Shown here in pieces: positions 46,390 through 64,000 of a stretch of DNA of 64,000 bases. The stretch lies in the NCBI RefSeq assembly GCF_963676685.1, contig NC_092346.1, positions 96,224,001-96,288,000 on the forward strand, given 5' to 3'. Origin of the DNA: Mytilus edulis. Taxonomy: Eukaryota. The notes under the pieces are model-generated. The model ran no database searches. It was not told where the DNA came from and saw only the letters and a program-made list of their open reading frames with translations. Position 1 is the stretch's first letter, and every line of letters starts with the position of its first letter. The translations under genes and the position numbers were made by a program.

Positions 46390-46484
46390 TTATCTGATAC
46401 TTTGCCCTTAAACATTATAAGATGAATTAGGAAATTACATATTTATATGCATGTATCTTTATATTATATGAAGTATTATAGTAA

Positions 46485-47742
46485 AAAAATTTGTAAGGGT
46501 TCCGCAGAACCCAATGTCTTGCCTACTTTTGATGTTAATCGCAGGCTCAACAAGAATGAGAAAAAAAAATAATTAAAATATTCCTCTCTATACTATCTTT
46601 TGATTGTAAGAAGCTTCTGCTCAAGTTTGATAAAAATCCAGGATAGTTTATGAATCTAATAAATGTTTTAATAAAATGTTTCACTGTGATTATTTTTTTT
46701 CATAGGTTTCTGACACAAAATACATGTAAATGTGGTCATAAATCATACAATTCTTTTGCGCAATTGAAGATTTTCAAAAATTTCAAAATTTGAAAAATTT
46801 GAGAAAAATATGAATCCCTTAAAAAATTGGGAAAAAAATCCCCCCCCCCCCCCCCCCACGTTTTTGAAACCCACCTTGGAGCAATAACCCCAACTCCCAA
46901 TCCCAGCCTTTCCTTTGTAGTATGGAACCTTGTTGTACAATTTCAGAGAGATCCATACACTTAAACACAAGTTAATGACTGGAAACTAGAACAATGCTTG
47001 TTTTTGGCCCTTAATTCCCAAACTGTTGGCCCCATAACCCATAAAATGAATCCTTACGTTCAACTTGTTGTATTAAACATTGTGGTTTAATCTCAGAGCA
47101 ATCAAAGTACTTATACCAGTGTATACACAAGTAATTATCCTGAAACTAGAAAAATGCTTGTTTTCGGCCCCATATTCCTAAACGGTTTGGACCATCATCC
47201 CCAAAATCAATCGCAACCATTCTTTTGTGGTATTGAACCTTCTTCAAAAATATCATAGAGATCCATTCACTTAAACTTAAGTTATTGTCCGGACACCAAT
47301 GTGTCTTCTGACGACGCACACAATGACATACCATTATACGATCAAAATTTACTTCTGGATACTATCTTATGATAATATACAAGCTTCTGCCCAAGTTTGG
47401 TAGAAATCCAGGATAGTTGAAGAAAGTTATTAAAATTTTAAAAACTTTCCCCACAGAGTGAATGTCATGTTTCCTGGCAGAAAAACTAAGTTTATCTGTA
47501 AGTAAAATATGGAAAAACAAGATTTTTTTTTACAAAATTAACTTCTTGATACTATCTTACATTGTCTTATGATCATAAACAAGCTTCTGTCCATGTTTGG
47601 TAGAAATCCAGAATAGTTTAAGAAAGCTATCAAAATTTCAAAAACATAAACCACAGAGTGAATATTTGTGGACGCTGCCGATGACAGAATGTAGGATCAC
47701 TATGTCTCGCTTTTTCAACAAAAGTAAAAGGCTCAACAAAAA
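46485..47742 (+). mobile_element. Nested Helentron/DINE-like elements
   Basis: Internal repeats AAGCTTCTG.CCAAGTTTGGTAGAAATCCAG; terminus GGATCACTATGTCTCGCTTTT...AGGCTCAACAAAAA resembles the end of 18095-19175. Confidence 0.6.
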
Positions 47743-48129
47743 AATACTTTGTGATATATACAACATTCTTCAGGCATTACATGTATTACAAACAGAAATA
47801 AATTTGACATGTTTATATAATTATCTTTTGATGAAATCAAGTGCACAAAAAAATCATCGTCCCCTTAATATAAAGATGCAATTAGATTATGACTGAGCCT
47901 TGATTCAATATGTGATGAGCTCTCTCCATCCACTATTACTGTTTGTGTCCAATGTGATAGGAAGCTAGCAATCCACCTATTGACCTTTCCTCTGACGCCG
48001 TAGTGTTCAGGTTTATGAACGAGTAGACTGCGACTAACATTGTCGAAAGCTTAAGAAGAAACCCATAAAAAGTATGTCTGTGCTCATATTTTAAGTGATG
48101 TCGGCCATAAATTCAATTAGTTGGGTTTC

Positions 48130-48640
48130 ACAAGATCAGAGCAAAAGCCATGTTGTAATTTGGTGGTAATCCATGGTTTAGGCAGCAAGCATTTGATTTT
48201 CTGGGGGGGGGGGGGGGGGGGGGGGGGGCTATGGTTTTTTTTGGAAAAAAAAGTTTGTTTCCAGTTTTTGGAGAAAAAAATAATTTGTTTTTGATTCTGA
48301 GGAAAAAAAATTGTGTGTTTCACCCTCAGCTGCCACTATATGTAACGCTAAAATTGAAAGAAAAAAATTGTTTTCGACTTGTCGCGAAAAAAAAAAATTG
48401 TTTTTCGCCTGTACAGAAAAAAAAACCATAGCCCCCCCCCCCCCCGAAAATCAAATGGTTGCTGCCTTATGATATAGCTTGTGATTATGTGCTCTATGAG
48501 TTTGCAGCATATACAAGTCAAAGATATTGGTTGGTAGTTCTCTGTTCTATATCTCTCTCCTTTTTTGAAGACTGGGCTAACATTGGCATTCCTCATCCCC
48601 TGTTTCGATTGATGTTTGAAAGATCAGTGTGAGTATGGGG
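48130..48640 (-). mobile_element. CR1/L2-like LINE RT fragment split by a MITE
   Basis: ANVSPVFKKGERYRTENYQPISLTCICCKLIEHII, resuming LQHGF after the MITE. Confidence 0.8.
48181..48466. mobile_element. PIF/Harbinger-type MITE
   Basis: TIR GGCAGCAAGCATTTGATTTTC / GAAAATCAAATGGTTGCTGCC; TTA TSD. Confidence 0.85.
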
Positions 48641-48689
48641 GCCTTTGGTTGTTTGGGTGGAGTTTCTAGTCCTGGAATGAAGGACTGAT

Positions 48690-48900
48690 ATATTGTTCAA
48701 AGACAGGTAACAGAGCCATAACTTAAAGAATCCGAAAATACTGGTGAAATCCAATTACCTGTTTACCTGTTTACTTACCTTTTATTTCTATATTTTAAAA
48801 GAAAAACAAAACAAAAAAACACAACCGGAAACTTGAAACACTTCTTAAAATGAAACGGTATCTGGATACGGATATCAAATTATCCGGAAAATACCTTAAT
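48690..48900. promoter_or_regulatory. Candidate bidirectional promoter / non-coding first exons of POMT1 (-) and GTF2H5-ZNF511 (+)
   Basis: Consensus minus-strand donor AAG|GTAAGT at 48779; CCGGAA (ETS-like) motifs near 48825 and 48884; lies between divergent genes whose first coding exons are preceded by acceptors. Confidence 0.35.
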
Positions 48901-49298
48901 TTATTTACTAATCGCAGATATTTGGCTGTTTATTTATTATGTCTGTACCTTGTATTTTTTTGTTCAAATAACATAGAAAATACGTTCATTGTATTCAATA
49001 CGAAGGGATCGAATTTGAATGATTTTGTTTTCGTATACGAATATTTCCATACCTTTTCCGTCATTGATTTAATATTTATACATTCAATTTGGCTCACACA
49101 AGAAGATCACAAATAAATAGTCAATTTAATTAGCAAATATGTAAGTTTCAACGAAACGGTAAAGCTCTTTAAACAATGATATATGAATTTTATTGTATTG
49201 TATGGTAGAATAGAATAGAGTATTTTATTTTTCCAAACTTATTCGGCACACAAGAGCATATGACATGTAGTCCAAATTTTGGACTACTATGGCATATG

Positions 49299-50965
49299 GA
49301 ATCCATGATATCTCGGCCTATAACAAAATTGGACTATGACAAAATCGGCCTATAACATAATCGGCCTCCCAAAATCGGACTATAACAAACTCGGACTATA
49401 CCTAACTCGGACTACTAGAAGAATATAAGTTTATTGTCTTAATTTTGTATGCCATAACCATTTAATGTAAATGTGTTTGTGCGAATAAAATATTGTCTAT
49501 TGTCTATAAGTATAATCAGAGACATATAATACATATATTATATGTCTCTGGTATAATGTTGGTTGTTGTTGTTTATTGGAAATTAATTTTCAATTCTTAA
49601 TTTGAAATTATTTTTTTATCTACAATCAAGGATTTTGTCTTACTATACAAATCCTTGCTACAATTAATTAAATAATTTATTGAAGGGAATAACAAAAAAA
49701 CCTTAACAAGATATATATTAAAACTGAGACTACTGTAGTCTCAGATTAAAATAAAAGTACAAAAAAACTTCTTTTTAATAATGATATATTGAAAATTAAC
49801 CTCTGATGTGTCTTTTCAGTATTATTATTTGTAATAATGTCCCTCTCAGAATTAATTTTTATTATATGCATATCTTAATTGATTATGACATCATGCCATG
49901 CCTTATAGGCATCTGTAACCGGAGAGCACGAATTTCATTACAAAATTGCTTGTCTCCACCGGGACCTCTGTGTTACAAGGCAGCGCGTATACCAACTGAG
50001 CTACATGTAAAGAAGTACTTCCTTAGCTCAACCGCTTACGGCTGACTAAGTATCTACTAAGTTTTCTAAGGGAAGCAATCCCGTCACACATCTATTATTT
50101 TTATAATACTTCAAGTATAGTCACTCATTGAAATATATAATACACACATATGTACAAATACGATAAGTATTGTATTATCAAACAAAATAAAAGCCTGTTT
50201 ATAGGAAACTAATACAAAGAAGAAGTATAAGACTGAATTCAACTTTAATTTCCTTAAATGAACAATGAAGCAAGACTTTCTTATCCATAGCAAATAAAAC
50301 GTTTATGAGTAACAATTATGAACAAGAATAAAATATAGAAGCACTTACCAGTATCACGAACTCTGTGTTGCTATAAACTACACGAATCACACTGTAAGGC
50401 ATGTTGCTTTGTTGTAACTTTTTTAGAACACTCGACGCAGTGGTCGGTACACAAGCACTTGTCTCAGAATTGTTTTCCCCTATATACCTTAATATAACAC
50501 AAGGTACTTAACTAAATTTTTTGAAAAATGACACCAGTTCCGAATTCCTGTTATTTTTTTATTTCTCGGTTGTCAAACCTTATTATGCCATTCCATGTTA
50601 TTTTATAGAAGTGTTTGGTAAGATCAAAGAAATCTCTGTTGTTTTTTTCAATTTTATATGTTATGTGTCTCTGTTTAAACATATCAAATTCAACTCGTAT
50701 AACAAACATTTAATACACTTCTATATATTGTCTTTTTTTTCAAAAATGTTAATTATAATCTGATAAACTCGTATATAAATTTAATATATAAAGTTTTTTT
50801 TTATTAAAGTAAAAAAAAATAAACAATCTACTAATCGTAGTCCGAGTTTGTTCAATATATTTCTGCATATAATTAATGGTAGGCCGAGTTGGTTAAAGTC
50901 CGAGTTTGTTATAGTCCGATTCTGTTATAGGCCGATTTTGTTTTAGTCCGAGTTATCCAGCAGCG
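49299..50965. mobile_element. Non-autonomous DNA transposon with inverted subterminal 16-bp repeat arrays
   Basis: (TCGGMCTATAACAAAA)n at left, reverse-complement array at right; 8-bp TSD GGCATATG at 49291-49298 and 50966-50973. Confidence 0.75.
49914..50088 (-). mobile_element. 175-bp TGT...ACA element containing a tRNA-like segment
   Basis: Ends TGTAACCGGA / TCCCGTCACA; 4-bp TSD CATC; minus strand GTAGCTCAGTTGGTATACGCGCTGCCTTGTAACACAGAGGTCCCGG. Confidence 0.65.
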
Positions 50966-52919
50966 GGCATATGCTCTTGTGTGCCTTATATTATATTGAG
51001 ATAATTATGACATCTTGCAAGGCTATTTATTTATTTTTGTGATGCCTTCCTTCGTCAGGAAAACCCCTGTTTTGACAGTTCTTCAAAGGCTAGTTATTTG
51101 GCTTATGCCTTCTAAATAAAGCTTATTTTGAATCAGAAAAGATCTTATATCCTCGTGTATTTTATTTTCGACCTACTAACATATTTTTCTGAATTTCCCT
51201 ATTATATGTTTGAACATAGACATACCTAATATTTTGAGAGTCGCGAGTATACTTGTGCATAAAATAATTGTATCGGAAATATATTTCGATCTTTAATTTA
51301 TTTTTGCATTTGAGTTCATTAGATCGATGGCACCTTTGTTGACAAAAACAAGCGTCTTGTGTTTTCGACCTATCTATAATTTTATTTTTTCGTTAAAAAG
51401 CTGTAAGGAGTATGCGTATTTTCGTATTCAGATTAACTTTAAGTATTACAACGACTAACCACCTGACAGTCATGTGACTTAATGACCTTGAAGTAAACTT
51501 TGCATGCAAAAAGACCTCTGCCATAAGTTTAGAAAATTCGTTTATTTTAGACCGATTCTTTTGGAAGGTAAAACTATAGTGTGTGATAACATTGTGTGAG
51601 GGAATTCGACGTTTGCTGTACCACTGTTCACTCCAACGCAATTTATGACAATACCACTGCATCAATCTGTATGATTATTTTTGCAGTGTTTTAAAAAATG
51701 ATTTTACTTTGTTGTCGCGTATTATTTTTGAAACATTCAATGTTTTAAAAAGGCGAATTTTCTGTATAAAGTCAATAATTATGTTGACTTTTGAAGCCCA
51801 AACTTTCTACAGCCTTAAATACGCAAATAAAAGATCCAAAAACTATACCAATACAGAACGACATGTTTATGGAATTATAGCAAATCTTTTGGTTTACAAA
51901 TTTTTATTCGTTATTGCAAAATAATGAACTTAAAATATCTGACATTTTCTCCCTACCCAGTTTACCCCTAATATTTTTTATGATGTGGACTGGTCATTGT
52001 TATTAATTCGTACGCAATTTGATTGGATTAACTTGTAATTAGTTTACCTTCAAACTTGTTTATGCTTTTCATACATGACTATTGATAATAAGAACGTGCA
52101 TGTATGTGTACGGTAACTAAAATGACCTTCAAACTGGACACTGGACGAGTCAATATTATGTTTTATCAATGAAAGTTAAGGTATGAAAGGTAAGAATTGC
52201 CACTTCTTCTATTTTCACAAAATTTTCCGACTACACAGTTGATAGATTATTTTTTAAAAGCCTATGGTGGAGATAAAAGAGAAAGTTTACAAATAAGACG
52301 TTTTGTTCCATTAAACAAGTCATTTTCTTAAGAGAAATGCCGAAATACATTTTACGCACAGCTACGGCAGGTAAAGTTATTAGTTATCATAACAAAAAAA
52401 AGCATTATTCAGTCTCATTGGAATATGTTAATTACAATAACTCCCAAACTTAAGTAGTAGGTATATGAAGTCAAAATATGTCCGATCTGCCTATTTTTGG
52501 ACATCAAAAGTCAATACGATCGTTTTAAAGTCAATTTCGTCTACCTCACAAAATCTTGTTAGGCACTATAGTATTAGTGAAAAGGGTACAAAAACGTGAT
52601 ATCAAATAAAAAAACGTAAATACTTAATATAATAACTTTATTTGAAAAATCTTCACCCCATGTGGATATCATTTGCTATTGTTACTAAGTATAGCAGCCG
52701 AATATGACATCATGCAGACATGCACAGCATACGGGAAGTGAAAGTAGAATTAGGTCGAAAACGTCACACGGCCTCACCATGACAAAATTATGGAAAAACA
52801 ATTCAAACAAGAAAACTATATATTTTAAACAGTCAAAACGTATTGAAATTTGTATCTGAAAGAGTACACCATGTATGACCAAGGAAACTAAACACTAAAA
52901 TAGATGTACATTTTTGAAC

Positions 52920-53015
52920 ATGTACATTGTAATTGTTCTGGACTTTTCAAAGGCATTTGGCACTTTGCCACATGACAAACTATTTCACAAGCTACAAATA
53001 TCTGGCATAAAAGAG
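52920..53015 (+). mobile_element. Short CR1/L2-like RT fragment
   Basis: Translates IVLDFSKAFGTLPHDKLFHKLQISGIK. Confidence 0.65.
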
Positions 53016-53250
53016 AACCCTAAAAGATACTATATGTATCATACATGTCTATGATGTCATACAGGTCATACTGTATAAACAATGCTAACTGGAACCACAT
53101 GGAGGTGTCCAGTGCCATAACCAAGCCAAAGCTGTTATATCAACCCTCTAATTCTTCAGATCATTAATTTCAGAATCAAAGCAGTTTTCCTTTTAATGCA
53201 TGAATATTAAAACGATATTTAACATTATGTTTCAGTGATATGGTGATAGA

Positions 53251-53466
53251 ATGGTGAATGTAACTAAAGGAATCCTTGTAGAATGTGATCCAGCTATGAA
53301 ACAGTTTCTCCTTCATCTCGACGACACAGAAGCATTTGGTCGCAAATTCGTCATCCAAGATCTGGGTGAAAACTGCCTATTCATCTCATCAGACATTCTA
53401 GAAACATTACAAGATAAAATTGACGATATAATGGATAGACTTTCTTTTCCATTAGCTGAAAAATAA
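53251..53466 (+). CDS. GTF2H5: General transcription factor IIH subunit 5 (TFB5/TTDA/p8), 71 aa, single coding exon
   Basis: MVNVTKGILVECDPAMKQFLLHLD...KFVIQDL...LF is the Tfb5 signature; acceptor TGTTTCAG ends at 53235. Confidence 0.96.
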   Translation: MVNVTKGILVECDPAMKQFLLHLDDTEAFGRKFVIQDLGENCLFISSDILETLQDKIDDIMDRLSFPLAEK

Positions 53467-53581
53467 CTCTGCTGAAAAGAACATATTCTCAAATTTGTCA
53501 TTTCTTTTTTCTTTATCTTTATTTACATATCATATACAATCATTTGACAATAGGTATTTTTTATACTTAAAATTAATAAAA

Positions 53582-56500
53582 ATGAAAACAAAACTATCCT
53601 GGAGCTGGATTACATCCAAAAGATTAATGAAAATCAACAGTCCACTTTTTGAAGAGGGAAATATTATTTGTTGCTTAGCAACAAAACATGTTACCTACAA
53701 AGAGGATGTGGACGATTTACTTGAAAGGTAACTGAAAAAAAGTCCAATACATGTACTTAGAATGTGTATGGAATTTTGTTTGCTATTTCTTTGCTGAGGA
53801 TGAAATGGATTTTCCTCATGACATTTTTTTTTTAAATCAATAGTTAAACAGAAAATAAGATAGTGAAAAACAGACAACAAAAATCTATTTGCAATATAAG
53901 CAGACATACATTCCCCATTTCCATTCTCAATTTTATATATGACTTATCTTAGTTGAAAATTGTACATATAAATATATTGTTTTCTTTTAATGATTAGATA
54001 CATGCATTGTGCACATATATAGGAGAAATTACATGTCATGTACTTTAAAGATATACAGATGTCATAAAACAAACTTGTTTATAAAAGATAACAGATTTAT
54101 TAAACCAGAAAAGAACATTTTTCCCCTAGTAAATAACTAAAGAACTTTATATAACTTGTAGTAAATCCAAAATACTGAGTAAATGTAGATCAAAACATGT
54201 TACATAAAAAAATGTATTATTTCTAGGAAACAAACATTTAACTGTGGTATAGGAACATGTGACAAATCCTTCCAGTCCTTAGCTGAGTAAGTATTTATAA
54301 CCCCAAATCAATGGCAGGCTGTAAACAATCATGTGAGTAATTCTCATCAACACAGATGTCAATGGACCAATGAATCACAGCATTCATATACATATACAAG
54401 GTCACAATCAGTTATCTGATTGTACATGTACTGTAGTTATGAACATATGTCACAATAGCTTAAATGAAACAGAAAATTTCTTGACTATTTCCATTGGTTA
54501 ATTTGTATTTAAATAAGCTTTGCAGATTTTTAAAATTTTTATTTTTTTTTCAAAGTTTTAACTAGAAAAAACTATATATTGCATTAAAAAACTAAAAATG
54601 AAGAAACAGATTTTTAAAATGAATGAGACTTGATTTCAGATATGAATCCCATTATAACAGTATCCATAGAAACGTTTGCAGTATATGTAGGAGATTTTAT
54701 CCATCCAGTCACCTATTAGATATTCATCTGTTAGAGTGGCATGATTCAATGTTTGAATTAATGGCAGAAAAACAACACATGGTAAGCTGTACTCAGTAGT
54801 TATTCTTTTTAAAAAATGGGGTTGTTTTAACAACATTTAGACATTCATCCAACAAAGCAACCAAAGTAGAATTACATTATTGTGAACAGATAACAAAATT
54901 TCTGAGACCTCTAAATCTCCAGAGATGTGCTGTAAATATCAATTAGACATCAATCTGATAACACTTTTATATAAAAAATATCGAATTTTTTTAAAGAAGA
55001 GCATTTAAATTCACTGTTAGAATAGCCTTTCACGAAAGATGAGAACACCTATACAATACATGGGATCATAGATGAGAGCCCCTTTGCAATACAAGAGATA
55101 GCCAGTCCATAGTGTTATTTGTAATTTATTCTATATTTGCATCAACATGATATTCCTGAAATGCTTTGAGTCAGAAGTGTGAAAATATTCAAATTCTTAA
55201 CTTCTCCATGGGCAAACTCTGTACCAAATATTAAGAAGAAGATGTGGTATGATTGACAATGAGACAACACTCAACAAGAGACCAAATTTAAATGACACAG
55301 AAATTAACAGCTATAGTTAATCTGCTTGCCCCAACATTTTGTTTACTTGTCCCTATATAGCTACTGGTTGTTCTATATAGAAATTACACATTTCAAGGAT
55401 GATTTGAGATGGTCAAGGGAGTTTGTAGATTAAAGATTTTTGAATATTGAACTCCAATAAGGATATATTCATATCATGATACACAATTCTGTATGTTTGA
55501 ACCCTAATGAAAAAATAGTTTTATTCTTTAATTATAGTTTCAGTGTCTTATTCCTACATGCAGTATGAAGTTAGCTAATCGAAAACAAAGAAAAAATCAC
55601 ATGATAAAGGTTCATAGGTATCCTAGCAACTTCAGGTTTGACAGAGAGAAGACATCAAATAAAAGGTAACAGTACCTCTATACTGAGGTTCAATTCTCAA
55701 ATAGCTTTGAACCATTCCTTTTGATAAAAAATCTGAACTCTGACTCCTATTCTTTATTCAAGTGAACAAACCTTGCAAAACTTACTTTTTGTATGGAATA
55801 TAAACATAAGAAGATGTGGTATGATTGCCAATGTGGCCCGAGAACACAGTTATTTTGTAGTGCATTTCTTTTAGACAATAAATTCAAATTAAAAAAATCG
55901 CACCTGCTCTTTCTCAAAATGATTTTTACAGTGTAGTGTACTACTAGTGAGACAAATAATATCAAAATTATAGAAACTTCTACCAGCTCTAACTCAAAAT
56001 ATTGACAATTCTGTGTTAAGGGGGTGTAAAATTCAGTTTGACAGCTTCAGACGTGATAAAATTTGACCTTTTTGAACTGGACCAAATCACTATTTAACAT
56101 AAAGATTCAGCACCCAAATTTTTTAAACATGTAATTACATCCCCCTACTTAATATTTCATGCATTAAATATCAAGAAATAAATTGGAAAAGTGTATTAAA
56201 TAAAACATGCAAGTTATACACTGTTCACACTAGGGACTATATTCGTAGACAACGAAAACCAAAGGACGATAACTGTGTCCTTGGACCTAATAGGATAGAA
56301 GGACTTGACTAATCTTAATAAAACTTTGCATAACCTAAGCTTAGGGAATTATGAGATAGTTTGCCAAGTTTCATGGCCATAGGGCATATATTAGAGAATA
56401 TAGGGTCATTTTAGTATTGACATTTGGATGTTTATTTTTGACGTATAAATCAAATATCTTCAACTGTCAAGATTTTGGCCTAAAAATTTTAAATTTTGCA

Positions 56501-59500
56501 AAAAATTGCTTTTTAAATGCTCTTGAATATTATATATTAAAAAAAGTATTAAAAGCATCTGAACAATCATTTTATTTATCAGATGTATTGTTATTATTCC
56601 AAGGTCAAATTTATATGAGCCTATGCCTGAAAATAGAGATTTTCAAATTCGGGGAAGCCTTATATAAATATGCACTTTTCTCAGCCAATTCGAAGTTTTT
56701 AAAGTTTTTTAAGCCTCAATTATTCTTTCATATATTTTAAATGTATAGAAAAGTTACAAAAAGTATACCACATGAGTATAAAATGGTCTTGGGCCATGTA
56801 GTACTGAGAATTATTTAGAGTAGATTTAAGCAGTGTCCCATATTGACATATAAAAATGCACACACAAGCTATAAGAAATGAAAATGGGTCACTTTTTGCT
56901 CATTTATATGCTAAGGTGTTATGATACAAGAAGTCTAATTGCAAAAGGACTCTTGCATTTAAATTTTTTGAAAGACAATATGGTCTGATGGCCAGTTTTT
57001 TCACTTTTCAATGGAAAACTTGCATTTAGTTTTAGTCTCAATAGGCATAAATTTGGACCACTTACTATCATACAGAAAAAAAATATGGTAGCATATGAAA
57101 GTAGTAAGGTGTACTGAACTTAGTTAAGTACTTTTTTTACAGATTTAGTGAAATATTTGTGATGGACTACAGATTTGATGTACAAAGCTCTTCACATTTT
57201 ACATTCATCAATTAGGCCGTTTAACCAGGGCCGTGAATACAAAATATGCTGCCCATTTTTTCTGTGATAATCTACTTTTCTCTATATTCAGAGTTCATAA
57301 ATGGTTAATTAAATTTGATTTAAGCATAGAAACACAAATATCAAGAACCAAAAAGCTGTCAGAAAGAAAGTCAGCATGCCTCTTAGGCATGAAATGTAAA
57401 CTGCTTTAAAATGCTTATTTTAGCCGTAAAATGCCAAAATGGCACGTTTTAACAGAATTTCTGTAAACCAAAGATGTAAATCCTTTACTTTGTTTGAGTT
57501 TGACAAATTGAAACCAACAAATCATTCAGGAAATTTGTCAAAGTACAGAATGTAGATTTCAGGAATCCATCTCTTAGGCCAGAGAACACAGTTATTTCGT
57601 AGTGCATTTCTTTTAGACAATAAATTCAAATTAAAAAAATCACACCTGCTCTTTCTCAAAATGATTTTTACAGTGTAGTGTACTTCTAGTCTGACAAATA
57701 ACTTCAAAATTATAGAAACTTCTACCAGCTCTAACTCAAAATATTGACAATTCTGTGTTAAGGGGTGTAAAATTCAGTTTGACAGCTTCAGACGTGATAA
57801 AATTTGACCTTTTTGAACTGGACCAAATCACTACTTAACATAAAGATTCAGCACCCAAATTTTTTTAACATGTAATAACATCCCCCTACTTAATATTTCA
57901 TACATTTAATATCAAGAAATAAATTGGAAAAGTGTATCAAATAAAACATGCAAGTTATACACTGTTCACACTAGGGACTATATTCGTAGACAGCGAAAAC
58001 CAAAGGACGATAACTGTGTCCTTGGACCATGTGACAACTCTCTACTAGAGACCAAATGACATAGAAATTAATAACTATAGGTCAAAGTGAAGGCAAGACA
58101 AGATATCAATCCTGTTGTGTATTCCATTTTTATATTGTTGTTCCATATTATGATTTTACTTTACCGCATCAAAATCTTTCTCCAGTTCTTGGTTAAATGA
58201 TCTTAAATTGACTAAAAGGACTCTAAAAGTTCCAACATATTACCTACACTCAAACCAACACAAATAACTGATGTGCAAATTTAAAACAAGTGACACATAA
58301 ATATTGTTAAAAATAGGTTTCATAGTTTTTAAGTTGACCATGTTGACAACACAAGTGCTTTACTGTTTCCTATCTCCGTTAGGCCAGAACATTTTCAATC
58401 TCCTGAATAAAAGAACGATTGTCAACAAAAATACAGTTACAACTAATATTATGGAGAATAATATTGTATCAATGTTATGCTCACAGTTACTGAAAGCAAG
58501 CTCAAAATGCTTAACCTTCTGATAGTAACTAAACTTTTTATGCTTCTTTAATCTGGGTAGTGGTAGACGTTTTTGCCTTGCGTGTGATGTTCACCACTCA
58601 TAGTACTAGTCTTATTGCAAAGTTAATTCTTCCAGCAGGGGTTAATCTCCACAAACTTTTTTCTTATGAGTAATGGACCCTTACTCTCTACTTATTAAGA
58701 TGATCTTGTGAGTTTCTGGAGTAAACACACTTTCTTATAATATTCACACATGACAACAAAACATAAACAATCTATTTTCTTTTTCAATAGTTCAAACACA
58801 AATAAAAAAGGTAGAGCACCCATAACCATGGAAACAACAGTAAATACCAACAAAGAGAACAAACAGGAATTACTAGATAAAATTCCATGTGGAACCTCAT
58901 CAGAATCAACCTCTATGGAAACAGAAAGGGATAACAGTAATGACCTTGGACTGAAACTTCAAGATAAGAGTCTTCCAGTAACCTTGTCAGAATCTATGTC
59001 AATGGAAACAGAAGTTGACAAAGAGAATAGACCTAAACTCAAGTTCAGCTATAGGTAGTGTACTGTTAATTCAAAAATTATTGGGGGCATTTATTATTTG
59101 GACTGTTTTGCAATCAACACAAATGCTAGTTGAATTATTGCTGTTTTAGGGAATACTGTATTTACCATTGCTTTTAATTTACAGATGATGAATATTAATG
59201 ACATCTTTATTATTATACTGAGAAAAAAAAGTTTTAAAAACTAACCTTTTCAATATAAGATTTAGGACAAGTGCAAACACATACAGTGGGTTTAAACATT
59301 TTAACAGGCGCCAACCTTCACCCTAACCTGAAACAAAAGTGTAACATCACAACATAATTGAAATTGCTTAACTCAATATGTGTTTGTTTTTCACCACAAG
59401 TGAGGCCCCTCATGGGGGGGGGGGGGGGTCCTAGTAATCACATAATCACCATTTTTTTGCCAATATAATCACATAATCATTAAATATTTGCTTATCTTTA

Positions 59501-61061
59501 GTAATCAAATAATCATAAACTAAAAATACAGTCCTAGGTAATCAAATAATCATGAAATATTTGGCTTAATAATCAAATAATCATTAAAAACACGGCCAAG
59601 TAATCACATAATCAAAAACCCCATGAGGGCCCTCACAAGTAGTAAATAAATCAAATATGAGGAGGGTTAATTATTGTCTTTGTGTCCTAATAATGAATTG
59701 GATGAAGGCAATGAGTATCATCATATTCTACACATGCATGTGTGTTTGAGAAAGAGGATCACAAGGGAATGCACTAATTTGATATTGACTATAATTGAAA
59801 AGATTAATGGCTTATCATACAATATATTTCATAATATATAATAAAATACATTAGCACCAATGGGAAGAAAGGGATGGGCACAAAAAAGATGAAGAAAATA
59901 GATGTGGGGTTTGTATCAATGAGATAGAAAGCTAATGATACAAATAACAAAAAAAACATCTAAGAGGTCAACATACAATCTTCAACATTTAACAGGTTTT
60001 ATATAATATGTCAAATATTAAATACTAATTTTCATCAGGCATGTACAGTTAAGGCTCACCTAATTATTTCACAAAATAAAAGGCAAACATGTCTTTTATT
60101 TATACTACAGTAAAATTGTTATACCTACCTATATACAAACAAGAGGGAGGAGTGTATAGGAATCTCTGTCTGTCCAACTGATCAGGTCATATCAAGCTTA
60201 TAACTTTTGAATGCTATTAATTTTTACCTGGTATCAGGGTATGGGATCCTACTTTATGGGATGTGTGTCAAGGTTGAATTGTATGCCTGCAAGGTGAATT
60301 TAGGTCAAGATCAGGAGTATAGTTCAGTCTTATATCCAACAATACAAAGTGCTCTCTTGACTCATAAAATGAATGTTTTAAAAGATATCATATGATTGTA
60401 ACATGATATTATGGTATATAAAAGAAGATGTGGTAGGATTGCCAATGAGACAACTGTCCACAAGAGACCAAAATGACACAGACATTAACAACTATAGGTC
60501 ACCGCAAGGCCTTCAACAATGAGCAAAGCCCATACCGCATAGTCAGCTATAAAAGGCCCTGATATGACAATGTAAAAAAATTTTAAACGAGAAAACTAAC
60601 GGTCTTATTTATTTATATAAAAGAATGAATGAAAAACAAATATGTCACACATAAACAAACAACAATAACTGAATTACAGGCTCCTGACTTGGGACAGGCA
60701 CATTCATAAATAATATGGCAGGTCCAATCAGTTTGTAAAGTCAGAAAGGACATTTTGGCCATAACTGTTCAATTTTACTAAAACTTAAAAAATGTCAGCA
60801 TAAAAAGGGAATAGATGGGGATTTACATATTATATCAATGCATTGTGTCATGTTACTCTAGCTATCAATTATTTTTTCAGAGTACCTCAGAATTTTTCTT
60901 TTGGACATGGTGTATCTAAAGGATTTCAGCGGTCAAGAGGACGAGGTCGTGGAAGTAAAGCTAAACATTGGCACAACCAATTACCAGAAAACAAAAACAC
61001 AGAAATGGACATTGAAAACATAGATATGAATGATCTGAATGATGCTTTAAACACAACATAG
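53582..61061 (+). CDS. ZNF511: Zinc finger protein 511-like (3 C2H2 fingers), about 306 aa, 6 coding exons
   Basis: Exons 53582-53727 (..LFEEGNI..), 54227-54286 (FNCGIGTCDKSF), 54640-54781 (YESHYNSIHRNVCSICRRFYPSSHLLDIHLLEWHDSMF), 55538-55665 (FQCLIPTC...RKNHMIKVHRYPSNFRFD), 58791-59054 and 60881-61061 (VPQNFSFGHGVSKGF). Sum 921 nt, phases consistent; motifs match ZNF511 as recalled. Confidence 0.92.
55835..58028. mobile_element. Composite element: two direct ~453-bp MITE copies (55835-56287, 57577-58028) flanking 1.29 kb
   Basis: Each copy has TIR GGCC.GAGAACACAGTTAT / ATAACTGTGTCCTTGGACC; a single TSD ATGT occurs only at the outer ends. Confidence 0.85.
59402..59634. mobile_element. 233-bp MITE with 6-bp TSD
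   Basis: TIR GAGGCCCCTCATGGGG / CCCCATGAGGGCCCTC; ACAAGT on both sides; internal TAATCAMATAATCA repeats. Confidence 0.8.
60420..60705 (+). repeat. Dispersed interspersed repeat (AAGAAGATGTGGTA.GATTGCCAATGAGACAAC family)
   Basis: Related starts at about 55236 and 55808 (split copy); degenerate copy at about 46085. Confidence 0.7.
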
Positions 61062-63017
61062 CTATATAGAATAACTGTTACTTTTAAGGGGATAAAAAAA
61101 TAAAAGTTGAGCTGAACCATGATATATACGTCTTTATCTTAAATGGCAATAATATACCCTTGTCCATACATCTATTTTTCTATTCATCCACACTTTGTTT
61201 TTTTCAACACAAAGAACAAAGAAGATTGATTAAATAGACCCAGAGTATTATATAAATTTTATTTTTGTCCAGACTTTACATTACTTTAATATAATGTCTG
61301 CAGATCCAAAGTTTTGTGCACAACTGTAAAATTATTATTTTAATTTTGAACATCACTTTGCACTGATTGACTGACTTTTCCCAATAATGAATAGGCATTC
61401 ATGGCGTCCCTACATGGTTATGTTACATCTATGTCATTTGGTGTTTGGGGGATATTAGTCTCATTGGTTAATCATACATCATGTTCTTATTTTTGGTCTT
61501 CTGAAGACCTATGGGACCGACTTTAAACTCATTGAGCCTCCGTATGCCGCATTCGTTTCTGTGTATTACAATTTCATAACAACTTAAGATTCCTGACACC
61601 GATTTTTACACATGATTAAGCATCTGAATCATTTAATTTGTAAATTAGGATTGAAAAACAATCACTATCGTAAATATGACCTTTTTATTTATGTAAATTA
61701 ATAGATTTCATCTCATCCACATGAAATCCATGAACGTTATTTGTTTACTTGTAACCGGATGATTTTACTGTAGATATTTGTAGTACGCATGCATCAATTT
61801 GGTATCGGGACAACTCGCCCTGTTTACAAGTTCGCCCTTGAAGTTACAAATTTTCAATCTTGCAGACAAGAAGATTTTGTTTTTAATAAATAAAAAGGAT
61901 CTATTTCTTATTAAATTGGTGTCTTTATTCATTGTTTTCCTTGTCATGTGAATTAGATGCCTTTCTACTTAAATGGTTTGAATCTATTTATAAAATTATT
62001 CAAGACTCAGTTGACAAGAGCAGTACGTTACTGTTGGGAGAATTTGATTAAACTCTAAATGCTCATAGAATAAGAAATATAATTGAAACTGAATGTACTT
62101 CCTTCTGAATAATTTATTGCAATATAAATATAAATCCCTTTTGACAAGAGAAATCTGACTTTTGTCAGAAATATTTTTTTCGCATGTGCAAAGGTAATCA
62201 CGTGTGGCGGCCATATTGGTTTGTTTACAAATATGTGAAGAGGCCTGTAGAACCATGACCTAAACATAAATAGTCTCTGAAAGCGTAAACTTTATGCAAT
62301 ACTATTTTATCAATCATGATTATTTTCATAAATTTAAATTTGATTATTTAAAGAAATAAAATTATAACAATTACGATTTTAGATAAGAGATTCTACTCAG
62401 ACATGCTGTGATCTATTTATAGCCAAATTAGTTTACCTATGTGAAAATGTAAATAATTTGTTTACTAAACAAGTAAAGACAAACTATGGATGGAAGATAA
62501 TAATTTACATAAATATTTCAGGACATTTGATTGATTTTAATAAATATAGGATTTAAAAACTGCAAGTGGAAACAAATTTAATCATTAGCTACATAATCAG
62601 CTGATAATTTTTCTCGCAAACATCGTGGTGAATCACTCCATCAATCCTCCAGCCCTTTCACATATTAAAGCAATAGATCTACTTATTATTGTAGAATATT
62701 CATTGAATATACATTCATCGTCTAATTGAATATATCGGGTAATCGGATATTTTTAGCTGAAATTTTGGGTATCCGATTGTCCGGAGTCTACTGTACTACC
62801 ATAAACATGATAAAGATAGTAAATAGTATTTTTTTTTCACTAATTAATTGACATAATACTGGTTGTAACATATTTTATTTTTGTATTCAGGTTGGGACCC
62901 CTCCACAATATATATATATATATGGTGGTGTTTAACGACCTTGACTGGCTGTACAGCCCTCGCACGGTCGGCTCGGTGCCCGAAGGCGTTTGATGAGCTT
63001 TATCATATTTTGATGCC

Positions 63018-63073
63018 ATGGGTCAGGAACAAGTAGTGGAGGTCGCAATATGTAGGCCGCCATCTTGGTTTTG
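63018..63073 (+). CDS. Candidate first coding exon of an unidentified downstream gene
   Basis: GCCATGG Kozak context, MGQEQVVEVAICRPPSWF, strong donor TG|GTGAGT; no further exon confirmed in the window. Confidence 0.3.
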
Positions 63074-63677
63074 GTGAGTTGTTTTTGGTTTTTGACTATT
63101 TTGGATTTTACTTCTTCACAACGGCTGCTTTCAGGGCCAGTTTAAAGTGGGAAAATTCTTATATTTGGAACAACTTTTCTAAATGAGGGAACAACAGAAA
63201 ATTCTTTTGACATATTTTGACCATTTAGTACTTAATAGATGCATAGTTCTTAGGGGAAAGTTTCATCAAATAATATGAATAAAAATGTGCTCATTTTTTT
63301 TTACAGTGGGTTGTAATGTTCTTCCAATAAGGTTACCCCTCATTTGGAGTGTTGTTCCCAACCTGTTAAAGGTCCATCTTTGTGTGCATAATTCAAAATT
63401 GGAAATTTCAACAAGCATCTAAAAATTAATATTCTTACGCAAGAAAATAAACACTGATCTGCTAGCTTCATCTCTTCCACCGATTTAATAACTAGAATCA
63501 TGCAAACAGACTTCAGAAAAAGGCATGTAAGTTCATCATACAAATATGACACTTTCTCTAGACAATACAGATCGTGCAAAATACTTCGCTTAAAATTGTA
63601 ACCTTAAAATTGTTGTTGTGCACTAAAAACCCCTATGGGAACTTTCAAAAGTTGGCGGGTATGTAACAAGCCTTACT

Positions 63678-63938
63678 ATTTTTATGCTCCATTTATGGGC
63701 ATTATGTTTTCTGGTCTGTCCGTTCGTCCTGCTTCTGGTTATAAAGTTTATGGTCGAGGTAGTTTTAGATGAAGTTGAAATCCAATCAACTTGAAACTTA
63801 GTGCACATGTCTTCCTTATGATATGATCTTCTTAATTTTACTGCCAATTTAAAGATTTTACCTAATTTTCACAGTCCACTGAACATAGAAAATGATTGTA
63901 CGGATGGGAAATCCATGTACTTATGACCTTTTCTTGTT
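63678..63938 (-). mobile_element. Degenerate Helentron/DINE-like element
   Basis: Aligns by eye to 16446-16766. Confidence 0.7.
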
Positions 63939-64000
63939 TGAAAAAAAAAAACAACATCATAACGATAATGGATCAAAGCACCCTTGGTAAGTGGGGCTGC

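What the first reader, a model, noticed from the sequence alone, without database searches (positions are those of the whole stretch)
53235..53727. GTF2H5 and ZNF511 appear to share one transcription unit (115-nt spacer)
Seen: GTF2H5 stops at 53466 and the ZNF511 ATG is at 53582 on the same strand. The spacer has no promoter-like sequence. It has a pyrimidine tract (about 53495-53525), a ~70-nt AG-free stretch ending in AATAG (53553, acceptor-like), and AATAAA (53575-53580) one base before the ATG. Inference: a shared upstream non-coding exon splices either to 53236 (GTF2H5 mRNA, whose cleavage site would fall inside ZNF511 coding exon 1) or to 53554 (ZNF511 mRNA). Alternatively a true dicistronic mRNA is made. 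Splicing versus polyadenylation would then switch between two unrelated nuclear proteins.
Basis: partly seen in the sequence, partly recalled or inferred. Interest (0 to 1): 0.8.

Follow-up and report, generated by a model that had tools for sequence, protein, structure and literature searches.

The report
One bivalve mRNA encoding two proteins
In this bivalve the 71-residue transcription and DNA-repair protein TFB5 (GTF2H5) and the zinc-finger protein ZNF511 appear to be carried on one shared messenger RNA, an uncommon arrangement in animals that resembles the two-gene TFB5 messages already described in flies and green algae.

Summary
A Tfb5/GTF2H5 ORF (53251-53466, Pfam E 2.7e-25) lies 115 nt upstream of ZNF511 coding exon 1 (ATG 53582) on the same strand.

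RNA reads show:
- a GT..AG splice from a non-coding exon ending at 49140 into the predicted acceptor at 53236;
- flat, single-strand depth across Tfb5, spacer and ZNF511 exon 1;
- splicing onward to ZNF511 exons 2-4;
- RNA contigs from two runs that carry both ORFs.

No listed splice enters 53554, and no cluster of RNA ends follows the AATAAA at 53575.

Both genes are single-copy in this genome. The same Tfb5-ZNF511 order recurs in an unidentified animal (L010/L011). A copepod-like polyadenylated contig carries Tfb5-CDC26-ZNF511 (L026).

Tfb5 as the upstream cistron is published for arthropods (partner ZNHIT1) and green algae (REX1). This is a new variant of a known kind. How ZNF511 is translated is not shown.

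The parts
49068..49140 (+). 3' part of a distal non-coding 5' exon; its true start is unknown (at or before 49068). The donor GTAAGT follows at 49141.
   Evidence: joint 49140->53236, GT..AG, X21 4 reads (longest shorter side 73 nt), X24 10 reads; sequence ...AGCAAATAT|GTAAGT. Depth is low, so it is used by roughly a quarter to a third of X24 transcripts.
49141..53235 (+). 5' UTR intron (4095 nt). It holds TE debris, including a reverse-transcriptase fragment at 52914-53054, and minus-strand RNA at about 51500-52700.
   Evidence: joint; X21 first_mate_on+ depth 10-30 at 51500-52500; ORF 52914-53054 with an RT-like motif, named from recall.
53236..53727 (+). Single 492-nt exon holding the 5' leader, the whole Tfb5 CDS, the spacer and ZNF511 coding exon 1.
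   Evidence: acceptor at 53236. X1 contig record 7 covers 53236-53725 without a break (2 other letters, 0 gaps). X2 record 12 covers 52874-53727. Depth is flat and on one strand.
53240..53257 (+). 5-codon upstream ORF (MVIEW, then stop) that overlaps the Tfb5 ATG out of frame. It is not kept in L010.
   Evidence: L010 leader read.
53251..53466 (+). Tfb5/GTF2H5 (p8/TTDA) CDS, 71 aa, single coding exon, single copy in the genome.
   Evidence: PF06331 E 2.7e-25; 1 match in G000; 82% to the Mizuhopecten yessoensis protein named GTF2H5.
53467..53581 (+). Intercistronic spacer: 115 nt, 80% A+T, no ATG, no stable structure.
   Evidence: MFE -7.7 kcal/mol, z 0.11; transcribed at the depth of both ORFs.
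53575..53580 (+). AATAAA hexamer. No sign of use in the runs laid.
   Evidence: the only AATAAA in 53236-53800; no depth drop, no listed end cluster; absent from the L010/L011 spacers.
53582..53727 (+). ZNF511 coding exon 1, with the conserved PLFxEG motif.
   Evidence: 38% over 37 aa to L010 exon 1, E 5e-9; donor at 53727/53728.
54227..54286 (+). ZNF511 coding exon 2.
   Evidence: joints 53725->54225 (cut +2; X21 5, X24 42, X1 contig) and 54286->54640 (X21 20, X24 56, X1 contig); match to L010/L011.
54640..54781 (+). ZNF511 coding exon 3 (C2H2 finger region), single copy in the genome.
   Evidence: 55% to L010/L011 E 2e-17 and 4e-17; 52% to L026 E 5e-15; 1 match in G000; weak zf-C2H2, E 0.037, below cut-off.
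55538..55665 (+). ZNF511 coding exon 4. Its start is fixed by reads; its end is read from the sequence only.
   Evidence: loose ends behind 54781 (X24 53 reads, X1 and X2 contigs) equal the window sequence from 55538; 46% to L026, E 1e-10.
60879..61061 (+). Probable C-terminal ZNF511 coding exon (the '...NFSFG...' region). Not covered by reads. The start is taken from residue 13 of the matching piece; the splice acceptor was not mapped.
   Evidence: ORF 60843-61061; 40% over 62 aa, residues 13-71 of the piece, to the C-terminus of L026 ORF3, E 2e-6.

Best explanation
Tfb5/GTF2H5 and ZNF511 form one transcription unit whose main mature product is a dicistronic mRNA. A single 492-nt exon (53236-53727) carries a short leader, the whole 71-codon Tfb5 ORF, a 115-nt A+U-rich unstructured spacer and the first coding exon of ZNF511. 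That exon is then spliced to the remaining ZNF511 exons.

The 5' end varies: a distal non-coding exon ending at 49140, a transposon-borne exon, or an unspliced proximal leader. All of these join or run into the same exon.

Shown: co-transcription, the splice pattern, the strand, and the lack of a visible break between the ORFs. Both genes being single-copy is also shown.

Inferred: both proteins are made from this mRNA. Tfb5 would be made by ordinary cap-dependent scanning. ZNF511 would be made by ribosomes that reinitiate after the short Tfb5 ORF or that scan past its start; I favour reinitiation, weakly. The arrangement works like the Tfb5-first bicistronic genes of arthropods and green algae, with a different downstream partner.
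For::
- Joint 49140->53236, GT..AG (X21 4 reads, X24 10).
- In the stranded run X21 all exon reads are first_mate_on-. By the tool's note on stranded libraries this most likely means + strand RNA; the library type is not on record.
- Depth across 53300-53499 and 53500-53699 is 15.7/15.0 (X21) and 49.7/45.6 (X24).
- Joints e1->e2: X21 5, X24 42. Joints e2->e3: X21 20, X24 56. The e3->e4 junction appears as 53 loose ends in X24.
- X1 contig record 7 (796 nt) runs from a 5' exon through Tfb5, spacer and e1-e3 into e4.
- X2 contig record 12 (organism B) runs 52874-53727 plus e2 and e3.
- No listed joint enters 53554, and no listed end cluster lies in the spacer or e1.

Other calls:
- 14 of 14 RNA-like runs (9 studies) hold 0.34-0.43 of the words of 53100-54900. 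The exons with the spacer make up 0.385 of that stretch.
- Tfb5 and ZNF511 exon 3 each match one place in G000.
- L010/L011 have the same layout (acceptor, Tfb5, 206-208 nt spacer, ZNF511 e1 in the same exon, then e2 and e3).
- L026 is a 3378-nt polyadenylated contig carrying Tfb5, CDC26 and ZNF511.
- the spacer has no stable fold.
- Passages seen: PMC7013941 and PMC9514664 (arthropod Tfb5/p8 bicistronic with Dmp18), PMC7896298 (Chlamydomonas REX1), PMC2276209 (Drosophila CG31917, with TFB5 as the upstream ORF).
Against: - Short reads and de Bruijn contigs cannot prove that single molecules carry both ORFs. The tool itself warns that a contig across two genes shows no single transcript.
- Only 24 of 184 loose ends and 15 of 17 joints were shown. 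A minor poly(A) site or a minor acceptor in the spacer could be hidden.
- The raw reads come from runs labelled organism A, while the window fits organism B best. For B only a contig is available.
- Scaled to exon length (my arithmetic), depth on e3 is about 1.4-1.6 times that on e1. The e1->e2 joint in X21 (5 reads) is low beside e2->e3 (20). This may be 5' coverage bias, but an extra isoform cannot be excluded.
- The 49140 exon explains only about a quarter to a third of X24 transcripts.
- Translation of ZNF511 from this RNA was not tested.
- The Tfb5 ATG has a strong context (A at -3, G at +4), which argues against leaky scanning.
- L010's spacer has 5 ATGs, which would hinder scanning or reinitiation there.
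Confidence: 0.8

Rival explanations
1. A shared upstream exon splices either to 53236, giving a Tfb5 mRNA that is cleaved after the AATAAA at 53575 inside ZNF511 exon 1, or to 53554, giving a ZNF511 mRNA. The two proteins would then come from alternative, mutually exclusive RNAs.
For: The motifs exist: pyrimidine tract, AATAG at 53553, AATAAA at 53575. The upstream exon and the 53236 acceptor are real. Two joints and 160 loose ends were not displayed.
Against::
- No listed joint enters 53554.
- Depth does not fall after 53575 (X21 15.7 to 15.0; X24 49.7 to 45.6).
- No listed cluster of ends lies in 53580-53700.
- Contigs of two runs pass the site unbroken.

Other calls:
- The 20 nt before 53553 are only 50% pyrimidine, and AG-free gaps of this size are common (33 of 992).
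- The AATAAA is absent from the L010/L011 spacers.
Confidence: 0.05
2. Two separate, overlapping monocistronic transcripts. Tfb5 RNA would end inside or after ZNF511 exon 1, and ZNF511 RNA would start at its own promoter within or just after the Tfb5 CDS. The bridging contigs would be assembly products of the overlap.
For: - Contigs can merge overlapping RNAs (warning).
- X24 lists 6 molecules beginning at 53583 beside a depth of 27.
- Depth over e2-e3 is somewhat higher than over e1 (my scaling).
Against: - Equal 'begin' clusters occur inside exons at 53291, 53510, 53701 and 54698, so 53583 is not special.
- Flat depth would need the ends and the starts to balance exactly in two independent runs.
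- No end cluster is listed, and no depth step is seen at the spacer.
- The same ORF order with a short spacer inside one exon is kept in L010/L011, and on one polyadenylated contig in L026.
Confidence: 0.08
3. A nematode- or tunicate-type operon. The unit would be transcribed as a polycistronic precursor and resolved by spliced-leader trans-splicing. The 30 letters found in front of 53236 in the X1 contig, which have 888 genomic copies each followed by a donor, would be the spliced leader.
For: -: the 30-mer is absent from the window but present 888 times in G000, partly in 1.67-kb tandem arrays.
- 8 of 8 copies examined are followed by GTAAGG or GTTAGG.
- The X1 contig carries exactly k-1 = 30 such letters, as expected at a hub shared by many RNAs.
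Against: - The 30-mer lies inside a roughly 440-bp dispersed element. Its terminal inverted repeats are 26-30 nt long and 381-383 nt apart in 3 of 3 dispersed copies, and the flanks are unrelated. That describes a MITE, not a gene for a roughly 100-nt SL RNA.
- No Rfam family matches.
- The leader sits on the upstream acceptor, not on ZNF511, so it resolves nothing.
- Other runs use a cis exon at the same acceptor.
- The 12 listed of 33 papers holding 'spliced leader', 'trans-splicing' and 'mollusc' show no report for molluscs in their titles or abstract starts.
Confidence: 0.03

Closest known systems
Arthropod Tfb5/p8 (Dmp8) and Dmp18 (ZNHIT1/Swc6 homologue) bicistronic transcript; Drosophila CG31917
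   Same: Tfb5 is the short upstream ORF of a two-ORF mRNA, and the downstream ORF encodes a small nuclear zinc-finger protein. This rests on passages in PMC7013941, PMC9514664 and PMC2276209. I saw the same layout in 8 environmental loci with a zf-HIT or ZNHIT1-like partner.
   Different: The partner here is ZNF511 (C2H2), not ZNHIT1 (zf-HIT). The phylum is Mollusca. The spacer is 115 nt against 20-64 nt in the 4 ZNHIT1-type contigs I measured. The downstream cistron is split by introns. The primary paper (reference 39 of PMC7013941, reference 53 of PMC9514664) was not seen.
Chlamydomonas REX1 bicistronic locus (REX1-S = TFB5 homologue, REX1-B)
   Same: The TFB5 homologue is the smaller ORF of a single transcript that encodes two proteins, and the locus is kept in several green algae (passage in PMC7896298).
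   Different: Different kingdom and a different partner protein. For green algae, leaky scanning is proposed in the title and abstract start of PMC11291117 (listing only). Here the Tfb5 start context is strong.
Copepod-like Tfb5-CDC26-ZNF511 contig
   Same: Tfb5 comes first and ZNF511 follows on the same RNA contig. The ZNF511 exons match at 52% and 46%.
   Different: CDC26 lies between the two genes. The contigs carry a shared 5' head that looks like a spliced leader. In the bivalve genome CDC26 is on another chromosome-scale contig (C12).
Spliced-leader-resolved operons (nematodes, tunicates, copepods)
   Same: Same-strand genes about 100 nt apart are transcribed together.
   Different: No leader or splice is seen on the downstream gene, and the mature RNA stays dicistronic. 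The rules of such operons are recalled, not tested here.

Membership tests
Tfb5 / GTF2H5 / p8-TTDA (Pfam PF06331) | Match to the family profile above the curated cut-off, over the whole of a roughly 70-aa protein | tested here: met
   88.5 bits against a cut-off of 23.5; residues 1-67 on profile positions 1-65 of 67; 82% identical to the protein named GTF2H5 in Mizuhopecten yessoensis.
ZNF511 | Sequence homology to proteins named zinc finger protein 511 | tested here: met
   The link is indirect and was made exon by exon. Window exons 3 and 4 match L026 ORF3 (E 5e-15 and 1e-10). L026 ORF3 matches vertebrate proteins named zinc finger protein 511 (E 4.6e-34 to 1e-22). The window's exons were never joined.
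ZNF511 | C2H2 zinc fingers recognised by a profile | tested here: inconclusive
   zf-C2H2 E 0.037, 14.9 bits, below the cut-off of 25.2, for the ORF piece 54623-54799 that holds exon 3. L026 ORF3 gives zf-C2H2_3rep at 25.7 bits, below the cut-off of 30.8.
Tfb5-first dicistronic mRNA (arthropod Tfb5-Dmp18, Chlamydomonas REX1) | Two non-overlapping ORFs on the same strand of one mature RNA, with Tfb5 upstream | tested here: met
   contigs X1 record 7 and X2 record 12, flat depth on one strand, and splice joints on both sides. The caveat is that no full-length single-molecule reads were available.
Tfb5-first dicistronic mRNA (arthropod Tfb5-Dmp18, Chlamydomonas REX1) | No internal promoter or poly(A) site between the ORFs | tested here: inconclusive
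   no depth step and no listed end cluster. However, only 24 of 184 loose ends were shown, and there are no CAGE or 3'-seq data.
Tfb5-first dicistronic mRNA (arthropod Tfb5-Dmp18, Chlamydomonas REX1) | Both ORFs are translated from the one RNA | not testable with these tools
   This needs Ribo-seq, reporters or proteomics. The only indirect support is that both genes are single-copy.
Tfb5-first dicistronic mRNA (arthropod Tfb5-Dmp18, Chlamydomonas REX1) | The downstream partner is ZNHIT1/Dmp18 (arthropods) or REX1-B (algae) | tested here: not met
   The partner is ZNF511. None of the window's ZNF511 exon peptides matched any of the 8 ZNHIT1-type loci. The locus is therefore a variant, not a member, of the published cases.
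Spliced-leader operon | A dedicated SL RNA gene, and a leader trans-spliced onto the downstream cistron | tested here: not met
   The repeated 30-mer is part of a MITE-like element with no Rfam match. It joins the upstream acceptor only, and no joint enters the spacer.

The most novel reading that the evidence does not exclude
Tfb5 acts as a promiscuous 'leader cistron'. Across eukaryotes this roughly 70-codon ORF has repeatedly come to sit upstream of another nuclear or housekeeping gene on one mRNA. The partners seen or reported are ZNHIT1, CDC26, ZNF511, BolA with GWT1, and REX1-B.

Within that pattern, the Tfb5-ZNF511 linkage shared by a bivalve, a second unidentified animal and a copepod-like arthropod would be an ancient protostome polycistron, not a convergence. 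That would imply translational or functional coupling between the TFIIH p8 subunit and ZNF511.
Probability: 0.25. Interest if true: 0.75.

Novelty: new variant of a known kind. Interest (0 to 1): 0.55.

Why it matters
Dicistronic mRNAs are rare in animals outside the lineages that use spliced-leader operons. My searches found no described case in a mollusc (15 of 35 papers listed, none on a mollusc gene). They also found no paper that holds both GTF2H5 and ZNF511.

Here both single-copy genes appear to depend on one mRNA. ZNF511 synthesis would then have to pass through or around translation of Tfb5, which makes this a natural test bed for reinitiation against leaky scanning.

With the arthropod and green-alga cases and the environmental contigs seen here, Tfb5 emerges as a recurrent upstream cistron with at least five different partners. 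That is an evolutionary regularity that can now be tested.

The result also matters for annotation. Gene predictors that keep one ORF per transcript will drop either the 71-aa Tfb5 or ZNF511.

Tried and rejected
1. Spliced-leader reading. The 30 letters in front of 53236 in X1's contig are not in the window but occur 888 times in G000. I rejected the spliced-leader reading because they lie in a roughly 440-bp element with terminal inverted repeats and unrelated flanks, and nothing in Rfam matches. I read it as a transposon-borne donor, either exonised or a polymorphic insertion.

2. Alternative acceptor at 53554 and poly(A) signal at 53575. Neither is seen, and the motifs are not beyond chance. 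The AATAAA is not kept in the L010/L011 spacers.

3. ATG-free spacer as a signal. By my own arithmetic from the base counts, the chance expectation is P about 0.34. The L010/L011 spacers have 5 ATGs each.

4. Structured IRES in the spacer. The fold is no better than shuffles.

5. A CDC26 remnant between the two genes. The spacer holds no ATG and so no ORF. CDC26 lies on C12.

6. Second copies of either gene. None were found.

7. tblastn of ZNF511 exon 1 against the 28 loci gave nothing at E 1e-2. Pairwise BLASTP to L010 exon 1 did match.

The organism behind L010/L011 stays unidentified; its Tfb5 is closest to unnamed proteins.

9. I opened no supplementary files. Dataset S5 of PMC7896298 and the supplements of the Drosophila papers may hold details on Tfb5 loci that I did not see. 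The primary paper on Dmp8-Dmp18 was not seen.
Full report
**What is in the sequence**

The window holds a 71-codon ORF at 53251-53466. It matches Pfam Tfb5 (PF06331) at 88.5 bits against a cut-off of 23.5. It is 82% identical to the protein named general transcription factor IIH subunit 5 in the scallop Mizuhopecten yessoensis and 79% identical to a Lottia gigantea protein. The organism is therefore a mollusc, most likely a bivalve.

An in-frame ATG at 53582 lies 115 nt downstream on the same strand. It opens an exon that ends at a GT donor after 53727. That exon and three further exons (54227-54286, 54640-54781, and one starting at 55538) encode a ZNF511 relative.
- Exons 3 and 4 match ORF3 of the environmental contig L026 at E 5e-15 and 1e-10.
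- That ORF matches vertebrate proteins named zinc finger protein 511 at E 4.6e-34 to 1e-22.
- I searched the exons one at a time and did not join them.

None of them exceeds chance. For example, 33 of 992 AG-to-AG gaps in 44000-64000 are 70 nt or longer.

**RNA evidence**

One search found 14 RNA-like runs from 9 studies and three organism labels. Each holds 0.34-0.43 of the sampled words of 53100-54900. The exons together with the spacer make up 0.385 of that stretch.

The single read-laying run (window 48900-54899; contigs of X1 and X2, raw reads of X21 and X24) gave the following.

- Upstream splice. A GT..AG joint runs from 49140 to 53236, with 4 reads in X21 and 10 in X24, plus variant alignments of 2 and 4 reads. 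The predicted acceptor and an upstream non-coding exon are therefore real.
- Strand. In the stranded run X21, every read on the exons has its first mate on the minus strand. By the tool's note on stranded libraries this most likely means + strand RNA with no antisense; the library type is not on record.
- Depth. Depth is flat across the Tfb5 ORF and the spacer plus ZNF511 exon 1: 15.7 then 15.0 in X21, and 49.7 then 45.6 in X24, for 53300-53499 and 53500-53699.
- Downstream splices.

| Junction | X21 reads | X24 reads | Contigs |
|---|---|---|---|
| exon 1 to 2 | 5 | 42 | X1 |
| exon 2 to 3 | 20 | 56 | X1 |
| exon 3 to 4 (seen as loose ends) | not listed | 53 | X1, X2 |

- Bridging contigs. 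X1 record 7 (796 nt) runs from a 5' exon through 53236-53725 and exons 2-3 into exon 4. X2 record 12 (950 nt, organism B, the label that fits the window best) runs 52874-53727 plus exon 2 and part of exon 3.
- What is absent. No listed joint enters 53554, and no listed cluster of molecule ends lies in the spacer or in exon 1. The one 'begin' cluster at 53583 (6 molecules beside a depth of 27 in X24) is matched by similar clusters inside exons at 53291, 53510, 53701 and 54698.

**Reading**

The simplest account is one transcription unit whose main mature RNA is dicistronic.

Tfb5 and ZNF511 exon 3 each match a single place in the 1.37-Gb genome. Unless a minor isoform escaped notice, both proteins therefore depend on this RNA.

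**Caveats**

- Short reads and contigs do not prove single molecules.
- Only 24 of 184 loose ends and 15 of 17 joints were shown.
- The raw reads carry the label organism A.
- Scaled to exon length (my arithmetic), depth on exon 3 is about 1.4-1.6 times that on exon 1. The X21 exon 1 to 2 joint count is low. This may be 5' coverage bias, or it may reflect an extra isoform.

**The 5' end is heterogeneous**

- The 49140 exon accounts for roughly a quarter to a third of X24 transcripts, judged by 14 joint reads against 42-56 at the downstream joints.
- In X21 the bin 53100-53299 has about twice the depth expected from the 64 exonic bases, while 52900-53099 has none. This hints at a proximal start near 53.1 kb, downstream of a TATAAA at 53076 (sequence read; an inference).
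- The X2 contig is unspliced at 53236.
- The X1 contig carries 30 letters that are not in the window.

**The 30 letters**

They are absent from the window but occur 888 times in the genome, partly in arrays with a 1.67-kb period. In 8 of 8 copies examined they are followed by GTAAGG or GTTAGG. I therefore tested a spliced-leader reading.

It fails. The letters lie about 70 nt inside a roughly 440-bp dispersed element with unrelated flanks. Its terminal inverted repeats are 26-30 nt long and 381-383 nt apart in 3 of 3 dispersed copies. Nothing in Rfam matches. This is a MITE-like element with a strong donor, so the X1 form is best read as transposon exonisation or a polymorphic insertion. It joins the upstream acceptor and does not separate the two cistrons.

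**Comparison with other organisms**

A metagenome scan with the Tfb5 protein returned 28 loci. Of these, 25 have at least 500 nt downstream of Tfb5, and 20 of the 25 carry a recognised ORF on the same strand soon after Tfb5.

| Partner after Tfb5 | Loci | Count |
|---|---|---|
| ZNF511 | L010, L011 | 2 |
| CDC26 then ZNF511 | L026, L027 | 2 |
| CDC26 then PSME4 | L020 | 1 |
| CDC26 only | L021, L031-L034 | 5 |
| ZNHIT1-like | L012-L014, L017, L018, L022, L028, L036 | 8 |
| BolA then GWT1 | L015, L016 | 2 |
| none recognised | L023-L025, L030, L037 | 5 |
| too little room downstream | L019, L029, L035 | 3 |

Several of these loci are near-duplicates. By my grouping they represent about 13 distinct sequences.

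- L010/L011 are genomic, and their Tfb5 is 77% identical to the window's. They repeat the bivalve layout exactly: an acceptor, a roughly 50-nt leader, Tfb5, a 206-208-nt spacer and ZNF511 exon 1 in the same exon, then introns and exons 2 and 3. Their organism is not identified.
- L026 is a 3378-nt contig ending in a poly(A) run. It carries Tfb5, CDC26 and a 473-aa ZNF511. Its closest named relative is a protein of the copepod Eurytemora carolleeae (76%).
- In the bivalve genome CDC26 lies on another contig (C12).

**Literature**

The following rests on passages seen through 'find'.
[quoted passage not shown] - PMC2276209 lists TFB5 as the upstream ORF of CG31917.
- PMC7896298 describes the Chlamydomonas REX1 transcript, whose smaller ORF is a TFB5 homologue.

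Searches found no paper holding both GTF2H5 and ZNF511. Three papers hold both CDC26 and GTF2H5; their titles are unrelated. Nothing on dicistronic genes of molluscs appeared among the 15 listed of 35 papers.

The copepod-like Tfb5-CDC26 contigs sit uneasily with the review's phrase 'all arthropods'.

**Mechanism**

Shown: co-transcription and the splice pattern.

Inferred: Tfb5 is translated by ordinary scanning. Its ATG has A at -3 and G at +4, and a 5-codon uORF starting at 53240 overlaps it.

ZNF511 would then be reached by one of three routes.
- Reinitiation after the 71-codon ORF. The 115-nt spacer is ATG-free and unstructured, which fits this route.
- Leaky scanning. The strong Tfb5 start context and four intervening ATGs argue against it.
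- A structured IRES. This is unlikely given the fold result.

The ATG-free spacer and the uORF are not kept in L010, so none of these details is a conserved signal.

From general knowledge only: the Tfb5 stop lies 261 nt upstream of an exon junction. Under an exon-junction rule, that would expose the RNA to nonsense-mediated decay unless downstream translation clears the junction.

**Verdict**

This is a new variant of a known kind: a Tfb5-first dicistronic mRNA with ZNF511 as partner, in a mollusc. Interest is 0.55.

The boldest reading the data allow is that Tfb5 is a recurrent leader cistron and that its linkage to ZNF511 is ancestral to protostomes. I put that at about 0.25.

The scan's own notes hold nothing earlier on a dicistronic unit: a look-up near this place returned only a transposon note, and a word look-up returned nothing.

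Noticed in passing
L001-L008 (match at 1501-1530 of each); G000 C1 and C2 arrays, e.g. C2:13760703-13866626: A MITE-like element of about 440 bp with 26-30-nt terminal inverted repeats. A 30-mer from it occurs 888 times in the genome, both dispersed and in tandem arrays with a 1.67-kb period. It carries a consensus splice donor, which in run X1 is joined to the acceptor at window 53236.
   Followed up: partly
window 53908-53940: A short repeat of about 30 nt inside ZNF511 intron 1. It has very high RNA word depth (11427 in X1, 7339 in X2) and hundreds of loose ends on both sides. It is probably a fragment of a highly expressed or very abundant repeat.
   Followed up: no
window 51500-52700 and 49900-50099: If the stranded-library convention applies, there is minus-strand RNA inside the 5' UTR intron: X21 first_mate_on+ depth is 10-30 at 51500-52500 and 69 at 49900-50099. 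The reads show many differences from the window. This may be an antisense or transposon transcript, possibly from paralogous copies.
   Followed up: no
window 52874-53235: In run X2 (organism B) the RNA contig is unspliced at 53236 and reaches back to 52874. It passes through a reverse-transcriptase fragment (ORF 52914-53054). This could be an alternative proximal promoter or intron retention; X2 also has an unspliced contig over ZNF511 intron 2.
   Followed up: partly
window 48825-48830 and 48884-48889: Two CCGGAA motifs (ETS-like, by recall) lie 250-315 nt upstream of the 49140 donor. This is a possible site for the distal promoter.
   Followed up: no
L020:1-34, L027:1-32, L026:1-25: L020 (Tfb5-CDC26-PSME4) and L027 (Tfb5-CDC26-ZNF511) share the same 32 letters at their 5' ends and then diverge. 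L026 has a variant of these letters. This looks like a spliced leader of the copepod-like source organisms.
   Followed up: partly
L015:194-2481 and L016:265-1987: Marine metatranscriptome contigs carry Tfb5, a BolA-like ORF and GWT1 (PIG-W) in a row on one strand, with spacers of 92-98 nt. L016 has a further ORF upstream. The source organism is unknown.
   Followed up: partly
window 55831-58032: Two near-identical repeats of about 450 nt (about 55840-56290 and 57590-58030) flank about 1.3 kb inside ZNF511 intron 4.
   Followed up: no
L038:1456-1695 (G000:C12): The bivalve's CDC26 gene (79 aa) is a single ORF on another chromosome-scale contig. No obvious neighbouring ORF lies on the same strand within about 800 nt.
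   Followed up: partly
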